From contig NW_026940848.1 of assembly GCF_032062105.1 (NCBI RefSeq), positions 62,001 through 126,000 of the forward strand: DNA of 64,000 nt, given 5' to 3'. Under the pieces are notes generated by a model that was not told where the DNA came from, ran no database searches, and was given only the letters and a program-made list of their open reading frames with translations. Source of the DNA: Saccostrea cucullata. Taxonomy: Eukaryota. The first letter of the stretch is position 1, and the number at the start of each line of letters is the position of its first letter. The position numbers were made by a program, and so were the translations under genes. Positions 57,633 through 63,361 of the stretch are shown one piece after another.

Positions 57633-59068
57633 TAGAAAGAAAAGTAAAATTGCTAGTATAATATACTATTAAACATATATAAAATACCATTTAATGAGTG
57701 TATCTTAAGATGGCAGCAGATGGTTACAAGCTCCCTCGTATGAAGATACTCTCGTCAAAAGGTATTCTATATATTACACATGATCTACATATTTGAAATA
57801 GTTTAAAGATAGGGTTTGTACGTTGTCAGTATTAAACTAGACCGATAAACTAATCTTTAATTGTATGATGAACTTTGACTATTATAATCAGAGTTAAATT
57901 TACCAGATTTCGTGTTCACTTGATCATTTGTAGGTATCCGAAGTACGTTTGGTATAAGTACACTGAATTTCATTAAGGTTTATAATATATTATTTTGATT
58001 TTTTTTAAATTCATTAGTTACATTTTTTGCAATATTTTAACTTGTTCGGACGAACAGTGATCAATAAAAAAAATTGCATACAATTGAAATTTGTGAACAG
58101 GGTATAAAACAATGACCCTGGGATATTTCAGAGTGAAATCAATTGTTATGGAGAAGTTAGACGGCCATGTAAAGTGACTTAATGCCCTAATTTATGCAAG
58201 AAACTGTAGAAATTACGTGTTGAATGTGCATGTACATGTATACCGTTATCATTTGTGAAGTATATGTAAGACACATATACCTACACTGCATGTATTTTGT
58301 TTGACCTTCGAGGGAAAAAATGGGCTTTATACTTGAAGCATGGATATTTACTTTGATATACTTGATATACGAGTGTTGTTTGAAATGTCCTCGGATATAT
58401 TTATTTAAGTGAAATCATTGTGATGTCTTATTTCATTCAAATCCCTTGTTTATAAGTGTGAAAAATCATGTCCATCTAATTATTAAGATTTTGAATATTT
58501 ACAACGATTTTTATATGTGGTCATAGGATCTACGCATAGGCACCTATTTTTTTCTAAAAAAAAAAAAAACAAAACATATACCCTCTACGGTATGGGGTAT
58601 ATATTTTTTAATTAAATATGGTTACATTAGGTAGTGGTAAATTTTTATATTAAAAGAAAAAATAAGAAAGGTTAGGTGTCTTTAGATTCACGGAATAATC
58701 ACGTGTTAAGTGACGAGACAACTAGATTTCAACCCCGTGCGGCTTTATCAAAGTTCTAGATATCTTCAATTTTTTTATTAGACTTTTAGATAACAAAAGT
58801 CACTTTATCATATAACCTTCAATTTATTTTAAAATTTCGCCAAATGATTTTTCATGAATACTGTAGCAATAGGTAAAATATAAATCTTTTTTTTATACAA
58901 CTTTGTAATTTTTAATTCCAATACAAAGTCCATGTAATGTAAACAAGCTACAAGAGTCATGCTCTGTGAAGCATATTTTATTTAAAATTATGAAGCTGAA
59001 TAATCTTTTAAGAATCACCTGTTATAAAAAAGTGACTCCCATCAAGCCACGAACTCCGTTTTCACTTA

Positions 59069-59179
59069 GATCCGACACCAATTTAGTGTTTCGGCGGTGT
59101 GATAACAGGCCAAATAATAAATAAATATTCTAAATAACTAATTATGATTAGTTATACAAGTCCGCCATCATCAGGAATC
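59069..59179 (-). ncRNA. Type I hammerhead ribozyme
   Basis: GAUUC-CUGAUGA-U-GGCGG-(insert)-CCGCC-GAAA-CACUAAAUUGGUG-UC-GGAUC: stems I, II and III all pair around an intact core with a GUC site. Confidence 0.85.
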
Positions 59180-59428
59180 CACTTATATATGTAAATCAAA
59201 TAGTGTTTATTTATTTTATTTGATTTATTGTATACCGGTAAGTTTTTTCAATCGTAGAACCGGTCAGGGAATTTCCCAAGGTCATGCTATGTTTATTTAT
59301 ATTATAAACATAGATGGAAGTTGTTTGCAGAAATATGCAGGTATGTTACAATAAGTTAATATATCAGTGAATGATCTGGTTTATTACATTGTAATTGACC
59401 AGTAAGTGATGTTTTCTTTAAAAAACAT

Positions 59429-61364
59429 TCATTTTAGTTTGGAACTAGTTAGGAGATCTCCTAAATTTTTATGTTTTTTATAAGCTATAATTGGTTTGTC
59501 TTTGAATATTTCTTTGAGATCGGGCTCTCTTGATAGAGTGTGCCAGTATTTCAGTAATTTCTTTTTGATATTACAAATGGCTGGGTTAAATTTTGTAACC
59601 ATGACCAATGGTATATCAGAGTTACTGTTAACTTTTTTTTTCTGATTTAAATGGTCTCTTTTGTAATTTTCCAGAACATTGTTCATTGAGTTATTTATCT
59701 CATTTTCATTGTATCCTCTTTTCAACAGAGAGACTTTGAACTTCTCGACAGCATTGTAAAATATTTTAGAATCGCTTGTATTGCGTAAATGACGAATGAT
59801 TTCGCCTTTTATAATGCCCTTGAAAACTGAAGGGCTGTGTGCACTATTGCGTTCCAGATACTGGAAAGTATTAGTAGGTTTGATGAAAGTTTTAACATCA
59901 AGAATCCCTTCTAATTCAAACCTTTCTCCCTTAAATAGGGAGATGTCAAGGAAGTTCATTTCTTTGTCAGAAATTTCGTATGTGAATTTTAACAGAGGAT
60001 GATGCGAATTTGCTATTTGGAAAAATTGATGAATTTCATCTATTTTCCCTTGAAAGATTATAAATCCATCATCTCGATATCGACCGTGATAAACAATATT
60101 TTGTTCAAATGGAAATTTGTTTACAATTTCTGAAGTGACTTCATACATTCTGATGTCGCACACTTCAGGACTGCATTTTGAACCCATTGCGCAGCCTATA
60201 ATTTGTTTATATTTCTTAGAATTAAATTCAAAGACATTATTCTCTAATATTGTTTGTAATAACCACAGAAGATCTTCTGTAGGTGGTGAAGGAATTTTGA
60301 ATTCTCCTTTGTTGTATTTAGAGTATGCTTCACTGACAGCTGTGAGTAATTCATTGAACTGCATATTTGTATACAGGGATGTAACATCATAACTGACCAT
60401 TATGCATTCAGCATGAGGTCTAAGTTTTTCTATTTTTACAATGAAATCAGAGCTATCTCTGATGTAAGTGGATTGTGTTTTGACTATTGGTATTAGGAAG
60501 TAATCAACGTATTGGCTGAATCGTTCCGTCACCGACCCGCATTGCGAGATAATAGGTCGTGCTGGGCAAATGATTTCATGATTGCAGTGGCCTTGTTCCT
60601 TGATTAGATCAAACATCGTCTGATCTAATTTGTGAAGTTTAGGTAGTAATTAAGTATAATCTACCTATTCGTGGATGCGTAAAGTCCATTAAAAATCTAT
60701 ATGTAACTTTATCCACATACCCATTTGCTTTAAGTTCATTGATTTTATTTTCAATATTCCTTTGGAGTAATGACAAATCAAAATTGTCAGTTATTTCGTA
60801 ATATTTAGTGTTCAGTTGGCGATCGCCTTCCTTTATATAATCGTGTTTGTTCATAACAACACATATGTTGTTTTTGTCAGCCTTTTTAATTACAATATCG
60901 TTGCGATTTCGTAATTGGTTGAGCGCTCTTCTCTCAAGTTGAGATAAATTATGTGAGCATTTTTTTATTTGAATTGAGGAAAGTTCAAGTTTAGTTTTAT
61001 CGATATAGGTTTCAAGTGCACCTATAATCTTTGGTGGTTCATATCCACTCTTAGTATAGAAAGGATGAATTTCATCGTCATTAGTCTTGAAATTGAACTT
61101 ACATCTCATTTTACGTGCGAGTTCATCAAAATCTTTCAGTAAGTCGTTTTTAGCGACTTTTGTCGAAGGTGTAGGGATGAATTTCATCCCTTTTGCTAAC
61201 AATAAGTATTCATTATCTGTTAACTTGCTTTTAGTCAGATTGAATACATGTTCTTTTGCATGAAGAACATTTGAGCAAAACTTTCTATTTCTGCGGGCTT
61301 TGTGATTTATTGCCCTAATAGATCGTTTTCTTCTTTTTATGTTTCGATCGAAACGACGTGCCAT
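59429..61364 (-). pseudogene. PLE reverse transcriptase ORF with a 4-nt frameshift insertion
   Basis: VFNLT..LT..E..LL.KGMKFIPTP, IKKADK, (RLYL)LPKLHK, RPIISQC, DVTSLYTN, GCAMGS, RYRDD, FLD, AYKKHKNLGDLL; extra ttaa near 60648-60652 joins ORFs 60639-61535 and 59429-60616 out of frame. Confidence 0.92.
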
Positions 61365-61792: not shown

Positions 61793-62599
61793 TTAGTAAG
61801 GCGAAAATTTTCGGCCTTTATGTCCTCTGCCTTTGCCTCCTTTATTTGAGGAACCGGTACTGGGTTTGTGTTTTACATCAGCCCCCTGTCTTTGTTTGGT
61901 CCTGATCGAGGTACAGAATTGTAACAGCTCTTTGTCGAACTTTTCCTTACTCGCATTCATCCGAGTGTTGAGTTCTTTTCGGGCTAAACCCGAGGAGGAA
62001 GTAGCTGTTCCTATTTTTCTGAATGCCTCCTGTCTGATTTCTCTTAATTCATCATTTGTCATTGCAATTTTTTCCTCCATGAATTTGATGGAATCTTGCA
62101 TGAATTCCTTTTTCAGAGAGTCAGATTTTTCCTTCCACAGAGATTGGAACAAATTATCAATGTCCTTATCTCCAAGGTTAGGATGACAGGTAACATTCCA
62201 CTTCATGAAAGGTGGTAATGTGTTATTTTTCATGGCAAAATAAATTCCCTCTCGGGCACAGGCCAGCTGGTGTCGTGTTTTCAGTTTTTCACTGAAATTA
62301 TCACAAGCAATGGACACAGTATCACTATCAGTAAATTTGTCCGATTTGACATCGGTTGAATCAAGATCTGTGAGATTCAATTCATAGTCGAACTGGTCTT
62401 CTTCAAGCTCATTTTGCATATTTGCAAATAGTTCTTGATTACTTGGTATATCAATATTATCATCAACATCCATTTTGATGTTTTGTTTTTTAGAGAGTGA
62501 CAATCTGTTCATACTGAAATCAGTGTTATAATGACCAACTTTTGGGTGGTCAGAACGGCAAAAGGGTGTGAATTCTGTATTCTTGCCGAAACAAATCAA
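61793..62599 (-). CDS. PLE upstream ORF: acidic N-part, helical/coiled-coil core, basic Gly-rich tail
   Basis: 268-codon open frame inside the element, same strand as RT; first ATGs at about 62512 and 62473. Confidence 0.75.
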   Translation of the reverse strand: MICFGKNTEFTPFCRSDHPKVGHYNTDFSMNRLSLSKKQNIKMDVDDNIDIPSNQELFANMQNELEEDQFDYELNLTDLDSTDVKSDKFTDSDTVSIACDNFSEKLKTRHQLACAREGIYFAMKNNTLPPFMKWNVTCHPNLGDKDIDNLFQSLWKEKSDSLKKEFMQDSIKFMEEKIAMTNDELREIRQEAFRKIGTATSSSGLARKELNTRMNASKEKFDKELLQFCTSIRTKQRQGADVKHKPSTGSSNKGGKGRGHKGRKFSPY

Positions 62600-62669
62600 T
62601 TAGATTAGATCAAATGAAAGGAAGTTCGGATCGCAGACAAAGTCGGCGATTGTTATAAAAAAAGTGACT

Positions 62670-63361
62670 CAATGAAAATGAGATAAATAACTCAATGAAC
62701 AATGTTCTGGAAAATTACAAAAGAGACCATTTAAATCAGAAAAAGAAAGTTAACAGTAACTCTGATATACCATTGGTCATGGTTACAAAATTTAACCCAG
62801 CCATTTGTAATATCAAAAAGAAATTACTGAAATACTGGCACACTCTATCAAGAGAGCCCGATCTCAAAGAAATATTCAAAGACAAACCAATTATAGCTTA
62901 TAAAAAACATAAAAATTTAGGAGATCTCCTAACTAGTTCCAAACTAAAATGAATGTTTTTTAAAGAAAACATCACTTACTGGTCAATTACAATGTAATAA
63001 ACCAGATCATTCACTGATATATTAACTTATTGTAACATACCTGCATATTTCTGCAAACAACTTCCATCTATGTTTATAATATAAATAAACATAGCATGAC
63101 CTTGGGAAATTCCCTGACCGGTTCTACGATTGAAAAAACTTACCGGTATACAATAAATCAAATAAAATAAATAAACACTATTTGATTTACATATATAAGT
63201 GGATTCCTGATGATGGCGGACTTATATAACTAATTATAATTAGTTATTTAGAATATTTATTTATTATTTGGCCTGTTATCACACCGACGAAACACTAAAT
63301 TAGTGTCGGATCTAAGTGAAAACGGGGTTCGTGGCTTGATGGGAGTCACTTTTTTATAACA
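62670..63361 (+). repeat. Inverted copy of the PLE 3' end (pseudo-LTR)
   Basis: Encodes the same 85 C-terminal RT residues (ORF 62695-62952) plus 3' UTR. Confidence 0.95.
63202..63312 (+). ncRNA. Type I hammerhead ribozyme, second copy
   Basis: gattc ctgatga t ggcgg ... ccgac gaaa cactaaattagtg tc ggatc; one stem II mismatch, perfect stem III. Confidence 0.8.

What the first reader, a model, noticed from the sequence alone, without database searches (positions are those of the whole stretch)
59020..63361. Endonuclease-less, two-ORF Penelope-like element at an apparently interstitial site
Seen: RT ends at AYKKHKNLGDLLTSSKLK* in both copies of the 3' end, followed by about 410 bp of non-coding AT-rich UTR with a hammerhead; no GIY-YIG or Cys linker downstream or upstream; a separate 268-aa ORF precedes RT; no telomeric repeats in the flanks; ends are 99% identical. 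Known: Penelope/Poseidon and Neptune PLEs continue from this motif into a GIY-YIG domain in one ORF, while the EN-deficient PLEs I know (Athena, Coprina) are largely telomere-associated. Inference: a distinct EN-less lineage using existing breaks or a nuclease in trans. The two 3' copies share one origin, so they do not independently prove the family lacks EN.
Basis: partly seen in the sequence, partly recalled or inferred. Interest (0 to 1): 0.82.

Follow-up and report, generated by a model that had tools for sequence, protein, structure and literature searches.

The report
Endonuclease-less Penelope-like retrotransposon family
This is a young but broken copy of a two-gene, ribozyme-carrying Penelope-like retrotransposon with no endonuclease, sitting inside a chromosome; it belongs to a large, old endonuclease-less family found in oysters, pearl oysters, mussels and scallops, whereas such elements are usually thought to be confined to chromosome ends.

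Summary
On the minus strand at 59020-62670 lies a Penelope-like element (PLE). It has a helical ORF1, a reverse transcriptase (RT) that stops right after the NLGDLL motif, and a 409-nt 3' UTR with a type I hammerhead. A 691-nt inverted 3' fragment (62671-63361) abuts it head to head. No GIY-YIG endonuclease (EN) or Cys linker occurs in any frame, and there are no telomeric repeats.

The RT frame is broken near 60650, a 43-nt 5' segment is absent, and the 5' tail is truncated.

Lack of EN is a family trait, not a deletion. Four subfamilies in this genome and about 650-aa RTs from Saccostrea, Pinctada, Mytilus, Argopecten and Pecten all end at the same place. They form one EN-less clade (ultrafast bootstrap 93-99). 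The nearest EN+ relatives, at 34% identity or less, carry the Neptune-type Cys linker.

The hammerhead covaries between subfamilies. A full-length copy starts exactly at its cleavage site. Both ORFs are under purifying selection (dN/dS about 0.2).

How the element gets a DNA 3'-OH is not shown. Intact Naiad-like EN+ elements share the genome.

I could not compare it with named Athena, Coprina or MjPLE01 sequences. Other first-stage notes flagged the same family elsewhere in this genome.

The parts
59020..62670 (-). Near full-length but defective element copy, 3651 nt: truncated 5' tail, 5' UTR, ORF1, spacer, RT, 3' UTR
   Evidence: It aligns end to end with tandem units in L062 (93-94%) and with the copy in L061 (98.9%).
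59020..59073 (-). 54-nt segment after the ribozyme, ending in the fixed 3' terminus ...TTTTTTATAACA. It contains a hairpin (GUGGCU/AGUCAC) that covaries with the L010 type.
   Evidence: The 3' terminus is the same in 21 of 30 loci and ends 1-7 nt earlier in the rest. About 17 distinct flanks are not element sequence. The same 54 nt form the 5' tail of the full-length copy in L061.
59067..59181 (-). Type I hammerhead ribozyme. Helix I is 59175-59181 with 59067-59073. The CUGAUGA core is 59168-59174, followed by one extra U. Helix II is GGCGG/CCGCC with a 64-nt insert. Helix III is 6 bp. Cleavage falls between 59074 and 59073.
   Evidence: Covariation in four subfamilies. The 5' end of a full-length copy lies at the cleavage site. 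Rfam does not detect it.
59074..59428 (-). Rest of the 3' UTR, AT-rich and non-coding
59429..60616 (-). RT, C-terminal part: motifs from RPIIS through YRDDGF to the thumb, with the stop right after NLGDLLTSSKLK
   Evidence: Pfam RVT_1 E=8.7e-6. 98% identical to the intact 700-aa ORF in L002.
60650..60653 (-). Site where the RT frame is broken, inside the conserved LYLLPKLHK motif
   Evidence: a length difference relative to the intact relative L002.
60639..61364 (-). RT, N-terminal part, starting at the conserved MARRF methionine. It has a basic N-terminus and the conserved PLE N-terminal region, including KADKNN.
   Evidence: Homologous to the N-terminal region of EN+ relatives.
61793..62512 (-). 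ORF1, 239 aa from the conserved ATG (268 aa from an upstream TTG at 62599). It has an acidic disordered N-terminus, three long helices and a basic tail ending in SPY.
   Evidence: AlphaFold2 model with helices at 62-95, 116-167 and 172-205, pLDDT 80-95. No Pfam match. No PDB fold match at E<=0.001. dN/dS 0.23.
62513..62650 (-). 5' UTR, with a conserved hairpin (AUCGC...GCGAU) at 62630-62650. The 43-nt segment that precedes it in other copies is absent here.
62651..62670 (-). 20-nt remnant of the 54-nt 5' tail, which is a copy of the element's own 3' terminus
   Evidence: (repeat I2).
62671..63361 (+). Inverted, 5'-truncated second copy, 691 nt: the last 85 RT codons plus the 3' UTR, joined head to head. 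Its hammerhead has a helix II mismatch at 63287. Cleavage site is after 63307.

Best explanation
The locus is one recent insertion of an autonomous-type PLE family that encodes two proteins and no endonuclease. ORF1 is a helical, probably oligomerising, nucleic-acid-binding protein. ORF2 is a PLE reverse transcriptase.

Shown here:
- The family is an old, monophyletic EN-less clade in bivalves.
- Both ORFs are under purifying selection.
- A conserved type I hammerhead sits 54 nt before a fixed 3' terminus.
- A full-length copy begins exactly at the hammerhead cleavage site and so carries a 54-nt terminal direct repeat.
- Copies are often 5'-truncated, in tandem, or head to head.
- Flanks are unrelated, non-telomeric and AT-rich.

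Inferred life cycle:
- Tandem or partly tandem copies are transcribed.
- The upstream hammerhead cuts the RNA and sets its 5' end.
- The RT binds conserved hairpins that lie just 3' of the AUAACA site in the read-through RNA and starts cDNA synthesis internally at that site. This is by analogy with the anole PLE of Frangieh et al. 2024.
- The primer is a chromosomal DNA 3'-OH.
- In this window both ends of one break primed synthesis, giving the head-to-head pair.

Not shown: where the 3'-OH comes from. The element makes no nuclease. I put about 0.45 on pre-existing breaks or replication-fork ends, about 0.3 on nicks made by co-resident EN+ PLEs, and the rest on something else.
For: PLE identity and absence of EN:
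- RVT_1 is the only Pfam hit.
- Homologues of 640-650 aa lacking PF01541 occur in Saccostrea, Pinctada, Mytilus, Argopecten and Pecten.
- In this genome all 105 scored RT matches of 5147 first-look candidates have E below 1e-127 and reach residue 375-395 of the 395-residue query. Full-length open frames are about 646-711 aa.
- The EN profile is negative on about 240 kb of family loci and positive on a control.
- The tandem unit is about 3.68-3.69 kb and is fully accounted for, so there is no room for a missed N-terminal EN.

Clade:
- In the first tree a 43-row clade is entirely EN-less, SH-aLRT 100.
- In the second tree 68 EN-less rows separate from a side holding all 54 EN+ rows and 11 other EN-less rows, SH-aLRT 89.
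- In the careful tree the splits have ultrafast bootstrap/SH-aLRT of 93/82 (36 rows), 99/92 (31 rows) and 100/99 (17 rows).

Hammerhead.

Fixed 3' end with diverse flanks and no telomeric repeats.

Selection: dN/dS is 0.20 for the RT and 0.23 for ORF1.

ORF1 fold.

Structure matches canonical PLE anatomy of pseudo-LTRs, tail and head-to-head inverted copies (PMC3846280, PMC11167929).

EN+ elements share the genome: at least 150 GIY-YIG matches, many inside open frames of 1027 aa. That length is close to the 1,024 aa Craig et al. report for a Saccostrea Naiad.
Against: - No RNA evidence.
- The hammerhead has an extra U after the core and a 64-nt helix II insert. Rfam does not recognise it and its activity is untested.
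- Only one independent full-length 5' end was available (L061).
- Target-site duplications are inconsistent. One copy has a clear 14-nt duplication (L033); seven other simple copies and the window copy have none.
- Several loci share identical flanks (L034/35, L038/39, L051-53, L054/55, L058/59), so some copies are assembly or segmental duplicates rather than separate insertions.
- The tree is unrooted, so loss of EN versus ancestral absence cannot be told apart.
Confidence: 0.8

Rival explanations
1. It is a simple deletion derivative of an EN+ element: a non-autonomous copy that lost its GIY-YIG domain and is mobilised by an intact EN+ master of the same family.
For: This particular copy is defective, with a broken RT frame and a missing 43-nt segment.
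Against: Every relative ends at the same point. This holds for subfamilies at 95, 62 and 53% identity in this genome and for homologues at 37-60% identity in five bivalve genera. No EN remnant is found in any frame. The closest EN+ protein is only 34% identical.
Confidence: 0.03
2. It is a Naiad-type PLE whose N-terminal GIY-YIG domain was missed because copies are 5'-truncated or frameshifted, as happened to Repbase Penelope-2_CGi.
For: Craig et al. describe exactly this pitfall in oysters. The RT begins with a Lys/Arg-rich block, as does the Naiad linker. Naiad-like ORFs of 1027 aa are abundant in this genome.
Against: Complete tandem units show that the previous unit's 3' end lies directly upstream of the 5' UTR and ORF1. 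None of the 351 related proteins examined has an N-terminal EN. By inspection of the RT sequences, the spacing between RT motifs A and B matches that of EN+ relatives, so no insertion-in-fingers domain is apparent. A canonical hammerhead is present, which Naiads lack. The one apparent ORF1-to-EN linkage, on C15925, is a copy truncated at RT residue 485 lying next to a foreign EN fragment.
Confidence: 0.02
3. It is real but not new. The clade is already catalogued, for example as Repbase Penelope entries from oysters, or as part of the Neptune-associated EN-less families that Craig et al. mention (MjPLE01-like), or as an animal branch of Coprina.
For: Craig et al. state that EN-less families emerge within Neptune and name MjPLE01. 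Neptune groups weakly with Coprina in their tree. The nearest EN+ relatives here have the Neptune/Nematis-type linker.
Against: Full-text searches found no description of a bivalve EN-less, two-ORF, interstitial PLE clade. The defining 3' feature of telomere-attached EN-less PLEs, reverse-complement telomeric repeats right after the hammerhead, is absent.
Confidence: 0.3
4. Integration route A: the RT primes on DNA 3'-OH ends that already exist, such as double-strand breaks, nicks or nascent strands at replication forks. This resembles endonuclease-independent LINE-1 insertion or EN-less group II introns.
For: The element has no nuclease. Seven of eight simple copies and the window copy have no target-site duplication. 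Flanks show no target consensus and no (TA)n. Two outward-facing 3' ends in the window fit priming from both ends of one break. Some insertions abut older PLE ends.
Against: The apparent copy number and the age of the clade are large for a route that depends on chance lesions. One 14-nt duplication points to a staggered cut. The 3' ends are precise, unlike many EN-independent LINE-1 events.
Confidence: 0.45
5. Integration route B: the family uses nicks made by the GIY-YIG domains of co-resident EN+ PLEs (Naiad-like or Neptune-like), so it parasitises them.
For: Many EN+ ORFs in this genome are open. There is a 14-nt target-site duplication in L033. Flanks are AT-rich, about 74% AT, which fits the AT-rich cleavage preference reported for PLE endonucleases.
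Against: In PLEs the EN is fused to its own RT and is expected to act in cis. Naiads prefer (TA)n targets, and none of 13 independent flanks is (TA)n. The RTs are too divergent for an obvious heterodimer.
Confidence: 0.3

Closest known systems
Neptune clade of Penelope-like elements, and the Neptune-like EN-less MjPLE01 of kuruma shrimp cited by Craig et al. 2021
   Same: The nearest EN+ relatives of this RT have the Cys-rich C-x2-5-C-x2-C linker that marks Neptune/Nematis. An upstream helical ORF1 or N-terminal extension is common among them. There is a hammerhead in the terminal region, and copies occur in tandem and inverted arrangements. MjPLE01 shows that EN loss near Neptune has precedent.
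   Different: There is no linker and no GIY-YIG domain in any member of a clade with dozens of 50%-identity clusters and at least five bivalve genera. Relatedness to MjPLE01 itself could not be tested.
Athena (bdelloid rotifers) and Coprina (fungi, protists, plants), the EN-deficient PLEs
   Same: An RT without EN, a hammerhead near the 3' end, and (from my recollection of Gladyshev and Arkhipova 2007, which I could not read here) an upstream coiled-coil ORF1 in Athena.
   Different: Those elements carry reverse-complement telomeric repeats immediately after the hammerhead and sit at chromosome ends. This family has a 54-nt non-telomeric tail and about 17 distinct non-telomeric, non-element 3' junctions.
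Naiad (N-terminal EN+ PLEs that dominate bivalve genomes)
   Same: Same hosts, high copy number, pseudo-LTR and tandem structures.
   Different: [quoted passage not shown] Here the hammerhead is present and the other features are absent.
Poseidon of the green anole (Frangieh et al. 2024)
   Same: A fixed start site for cDNA that needs no homology to the target, a tail signature, and extension from both strands of the target.
   Different: That protein makes its own cuts with GIY-YIG. This family cannot.
Metazoan non-LTR retrozymes
   Same: A type I hammerhead, tandem arrays, and mussel and other invertebrate hosts.
   Different: Retrozymes are 170-400 nt and non-coding. This is a 3.7-kb coding element and a candidate mobiliser for them.

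Membership tests
Penelope-like elements (PLE) | A PLE-type RT: LPKxHK, RPIxS and YxDD motifs, the conserved N-terminal region, and a thumb ending in NLxDxL | tested here: met
   All homologues are PLE-type proteins carrying DUF8422, RVT_1 and HTH_animal. EN+ relatives align over the whole RT.
Penelope-like elements (PLE) | A hammerhead ribozyme motif in the terminal or pseudo-LTR region | tested here: met
   Found by motif, covariation and a 5' end at the cleavage site. Not found by Rfam. Cleavage activity was not tested.
Penelope-like elements (PLE) | Partial tandem or inverted insertions, a tail, and frequent 5' truncation | tested here: met
Canonical EN+ PLE (Neptune, Nematis, Penelope/Poseidon, Hydra) | [quoted passage not shown] | tested here: not met
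   with a positive control.
Neptune/Nematis | A Cys-rich C-x2-5-C-x2-C linker between RT and EN | tested here: not met
   Absent here. Present in the nearest EN+ relatives.
Neptune (by RT phylogeny) | The RT groups with named Neptune references | not testable with these tools
   No labelled reference sequences could be brought into the tree. The only indication is the linker type of the nearest relatives.
Naiad/Chlamys | [quoted passage not shown] | tested here: not met
Athena/Coprina (telomere-attached EN-less PLEs) | No endonuclease | tested here: met
Athena/Coprina (telomere-attached EN-less PLEs) | Reverse-complement telomeric repeats immediately 3' of the hammerhead, and location at chromosome ends | tested here: not met
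   One sublineage has an internal (CCCTAA)2.5 upstream of the ribozyme.
Athena/Coprina (by RT phylogeny) | The RT groups with named Athena or Coprina references | not testable with these tools
   No named references were available. No rotifer or fungal names appear among the listed homologues.

The most novel reading that the evidence does not exclude
A major, so far unnamed superfamily of PLEs has lived without any endonuclease for a long stretch of bivalve evolution and still colonises chromosome interiors, apparently in large copy numbers. It would do this either by exploiting nicks made by unrelated EN+ PLEs (a retroelement parasitising another clade's nuclease) or through a dedicated way of capturing replication or repair 3'-OH ends. 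It could also be the autonomous partner that mobilises bivalve hammerhead retrozymes.
Probability: 0.3. Interest if true: 0.72.

Novelty: new variant of a known kind. Interest (0 to 1): 0.55.

Why it matters
The working rule in the field is that PLEs with GIY-YIG spread through chromosomes and PLEs without it are generally restricted to telomeres (Craig et al. 2021). This clade is abundant, under selection and recently active, and it breaks that rule. It therefore makes one question testable: how does a telomerase-like RT find a primer inside a chromosome without its own nuclease?

The clade also matters for annotating bivalve genomes, where PLEs are the commonest repeats. It offers a candidate RT for mobilising hammerhead retrozymes. 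It supplies a natural, compact (about 645-aa) PLE RT with a defined RNA start site.

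Tried and rejected
- Rfam, with E-value threshold on 8 kb and on 261 nt, found no hammerhead. The weak mir-973, bxd_3 and LhrA matches are chance.
- The minimum-free-energy fold of the ribozyme region is no better than shuffles (z = -0.67), so thermodynamics alone does not support the structure. 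Motif, covariation and the 5' end do.
- ORF1: no Pfam family. Only two word-search homologues. No PDB fold match. No similarity to the N-terminal part of the EN+ relative P0101, nor to the N-terminal extensions of the ORF1-fused EN-less members (profile comparison).
- PDB sequence search with the RT: nothing.
- Protein atlas: only generic PLE-like clusters, no help with clade assignment.
- Cluster look-up for taxa of deep clade members: no names.
- An apparent ORF1...EN linkage on C15925 and C22149 suggested an EN+ close relative. Inspection showed a copy truncated at RT residue 485 next to a foreign EN fragment.
- DKG to DKN/DKS as a clade marker: rejected, because 29 of the 49 clade rows where the motif could be read keep DKG.
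- A search for hammerheads in three distant members' contigs (L063-L065) found none with my scan. This is inconclusive.
- Supplements of Craig et al. and three older papers were not available.
The N run at 49311-49444 was left as it is.

Full report
WHAT IS THERE

On the minus strand, 59020-62670 is a 3,651-nt retroelement copy. Reading 5' to 3' it contains:
- a 20-nt remnant of a tail (62651-62670);
- a 5' UTR with a conserved hairpin (62513-62650);
- ORF1 (61793-62512 from its conserved ATG);
- a non-coding spacer;
- a reverse transcriptase in two frames (60639-61364 and 59429-60616);
- a 409-nt AT-rich 3' UTR (59020-59428).

The RT frame is broken at 60650-60653, inside the conserved LYLLPKLHK motif, relative to a 98%-identical copy with an intact 700-aa ORF. 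So this copy cannot be autonomous.

Directly upstream, on the plus strand, 62671-63361 is a second, 5'-truncated copy. It holds the last 85 RT codons and the 3' UTR. The two copies are head to head with both 3' ends pointing outward. They differ at 6 of 691 positions.

This head-to-head layout, together with a tail, is the usual anatomy of Penelope-like insertions (Arkhipova et al. 2013, PMC3846280).

Every item was confirmed:
- the stop after NLGDLLTSSKLK in both copies;
- the roughly 410-nt UTR;
- the upstream ORF;
- the absence of telomeric repeats, in the whole window and at the junctions;
- the 99% identity of the ends.

The absence of an endonuclease was tested properly. I built a profile from the C-terminal tails of 47 EN+ relatives and ran it at maximal sensitivity on six-frame translations of the window and of 62 family loci, about 240 kb in all. 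The best E-value was 0.7. The same profile finds a foreign GIY-YIG fragment in locus L066 at 2e-37.

THE HAMMERHEAD

Rfam does not see it, and the free-energy fold is unremarkable. The motif is nonetheless complete:
- helix I, UGGAUUC with GGAUCUA;
- the CUGAUGA core, followed by one extra U;
- helix II, GGCGG with CCGCC, closing a 64-nt insert;
- GAAA;
- helix III of 6 bp;
- cleavage after C59074.

My scan finds this one site in the window, against 0.15 per shuffled window.

Four subfamilies in the same genome keep the motif with different, compensating helix I sequences: ACUC/GAGU, GGCUC/GAGUC and GACCC/GGGUC. One of them has the large insert in helix III instead of helix II.

The strongest evidence is from locus L061. 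There a 98.9%-identical full-length copy begins at exactly the nucleotide after the cleavage site, so it carries the 54 nt that follow the ribozyme at both ends. That is what one expects if the template RNA's 5' end is made by self-cleavage.

Cleavage itself was not tested.

LACK OF AN ENDONUCLEASE IS A FAMILY TRAIT

In this 1.17-Gb genome the RT query gave 105 scored matches, all with E below 1e-127, out of 5,147 first-look candidates. Subfamilies at 95, 62 and 53% identity have open frames of about 646-711 aa, and all matches reach residue 375-395 of the 395-residue query. Each subfamily has its own ORF1 and tandem units.

The tandem unit is about 3.68-3.69 kb and every part of it is accounted for. 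This closes the loophole that caught earlier annotators of oyster PLEs, where a 5'-truncated Naiad hides an N-terminal endonuclease (Craig et al. 2021).

Outside this genome, RTs of about 640-650 aa without PF01541 occur in Saccostrea, Pinctada, Mytilus, Argopecten and Pecten, and in many unnamed assemblies. An exhaustive search of 1.84 billion representatives gave 1,424 hits below 1e-30.

The trees of the RT region agree:
- A first tree recovers a 43-row clade that is entirely EN-less, SH-aLRT 100.
- A larger one separates 68 EN-less rows from a side that holds all 54 EN+ rows and 11 other EN-less rows, SH-aLRT 89.
- A full search with ultrafast bootstraps gives bootstrap/SH-aLRT of 93/82 for the widest split (36 rows), 99/92 for the core (31 rows) and 100/99 for the inner clade that holds the named bivalves.

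Ten members of the clade have an N-terminal extension of 144-302 aa fused in frame with the RT, in the position ORF1 would occupy. They still end at the same C-terminus. Contigs of two distant members show an upstream ORF or an N-terminal fusion, and contigs of three show no EN.

The nearest EN+ proteins are 34% identical or less. All have a C-terminal GIY-YIG domain preceded by C-x2-5-C-x2-C. That is the linker that marks Neptune and Nematis (PMC3846280; PMC8557442).

The tree has no outgroup, so I cannot say whether EN was lost or was never present.

THE TWO PROTEINS

dN/dS between sublineages is 0.20 for the RT and 0.23 for ORF1, so both are maintained by selection.

ORF1 evolves quickly. 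It is 38% and about 24% identical between subfamilies. It keeps a common plan: an acidic, disordered N-terminus, three long helices modelled with high confidence, and a basic tail ending in PY. It has no Pfam family and no significant fold match. It is all-helical, unlike the alpha/beta fold of GIY-YIG nucleases (general knowledge). It most resembles the oligomerising RNA-binding ORF1 proteins of other retrotransposons, but that is an analogy, not a test.

The RT has no extra domain relative to its EN+ relatives, which align with it from the N-terminal region to the thumb.

HOW IT PROBABLY WORKS

What is shown:
- Copies end at a fixed site...UUUUUUAUAACA, in 21 of 30 loci examined. The rest end 1-7 nt earlier, mostly in the U run.
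- About 17 distinct flanks are not element sequence.
- In tandem arrays this site is followed by 43 nt and then by two hairpins. These hairpins are conserved between subfamilies whose proteins are only 53-62% identical.

What I infer: the RT binds these hairpins in a longer-than-unit transcript and starts cDNA synthesis internally at AUAACA. This is by analogy with the anole PLE, whose RT starts at two adjacent internal sites with no homology to the target and extends both target strands (Frangieh et al. 2024, PMC11167929). Synthesis then runs to the ribozyme-made 5' end. In the window, both sides of one break were extended.

What is not shown is the source of the DNA 3'-OH.
- For pre-existing breaks or replication-fork ends: seven of eight simple copies and the window copy lack target-site duplications.
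- For a nuclease in trans: one copy has a clear 14-nt duplication, and the genome holds at least 150 GIY-YIG matches, many inside open 1027-aa frames that look like Naiads.
- Against Naiads as helpers: they prefer (TA)n targets, and none of these flanks is (TA)n.

COMPARISON WITH WHAT IS KNOWN

Craig et al. 2021 describe Athena and Coprina as the EN-less clades. These attach to telomeres through reverse-complement telomeric repeats placed right after the hammerhead. That feature was tested here and is not met.

The same paper notes that EN-less families occasionally arise within Chlamys and Neptune, and it names MjPLE01 of kuruma shrimp. So the principle is known.

I found no description of a bivalve-wide, two-ORF, interstitial EN-less clade in the searchable literature. 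However, Repbase reports and several key papers were not available, and I could not place named references in the tree.

I therefore rate this as a new variant of a known kind. I give about a 30% chance that specialists already have it catalogued.

OTHER NOTES FROM THIS SCAN

Other first-stage notes on this genome describe the same family at other places (s1-700955, s1-701012) and the same hammerhead (s1-703906). These are unverified readings and not independent evidence.

VERDICT

It remains open as to the integration mechanism and as to formal novelty.

Noticed in passing
L054:1484-1495 and L055 (same flanks); compare window 59262-59275: One sublineage has (CCCTAA)2.5, the reverse complement of the TTAGGG telomere repeat, inside the 3' UTR about 130 nt upstream of the hammerhead. 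Other copies have a single CCCTAAC or CCCTGAC at that spot. It could be chance, or a relic of a telomere-attaching ancestor.
   Followed up: partly
window 62630-62650 (-); L010:2895-2960; L024:2865-2925; L040 tandem junction: Two small hairpins (GGACAAUGUCC-like and AUCGC...GCGAU) at the unit's 5' end are conserved between subfamilies whose RTs are only 53-62% identical. In tandem arrays they lie just 3' of the cDNA start site, so they are candidates for the RT recognition element.
   Followed up: partly
window 59028-59046 (-): A hairpin in the 54-nt tail (GUGGCU...AGUCAC) has a G-U pair that is G-C in the L010-type subfamily.
   Followed up: no
window 59055-59157 versus 63224-63326: Five of the six differences between the two arms lie in the last 140 nt, and four fall inside the 115-nt hammerhead (about one expected; post hoc binomial p about 0.009). 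The inverted arm has lost a helix II pair at 63287.
   Followed up: partly
L061:3234-3831: The 98.9%-identical copy carries a roughly 590-nt foreign insertion inside helix II of its hammerhead. Its 5' end abuts the 3' end of an older element of another subfamily.
   Followed up: partly
L066 (G000:C15925:3500-8500); same arrangement on C22149: A degenerate copy truncated at RT residue 485 lies next to a Cys-linker plus GIY-YIG fragment of another PLE. It mimics an ORF1-RT-EN element.
   Followed up: yes
own genome: At least 150 GIY-YIG matches (1,954 first-look candidates), many inside open frames of exactly 1027 aa. This is close to the 1,024 aa reported for a Saccostrea Naiad, so Naiads look abundant and intact here.
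   Followed up: partly
L034/L035, L038/L039, L051-L053, L054/L055, L058/L059: Pairs or triplets of loci on different contigs share identical flanks. The assembly seems to hold uncollapsed haplotypes or recent segmental duplications, which inflates copy counts.
   Followed up: no
L043 and L048: Another inverted structure in the family. Element positions 2133-2379, in reverse orientation, join positions 2370-3645 with a 10-nt overlap. This is the palindromic junction type discussed for PLE self-priming.
   Followed up: no
window 49500-54800: Long ORFs (365, 390, 327 and 223 aa) about 4 kb from the element. Another first-stage note calls this a Ngaro-type element. The neighbourhood is rich in transposable elements.
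   Followed up: no
window 49311-49444 and 57523-57586: A 134-nt run of N (left untouched) and a (GACAGACG)8 microsatellite.
   Followed up: no
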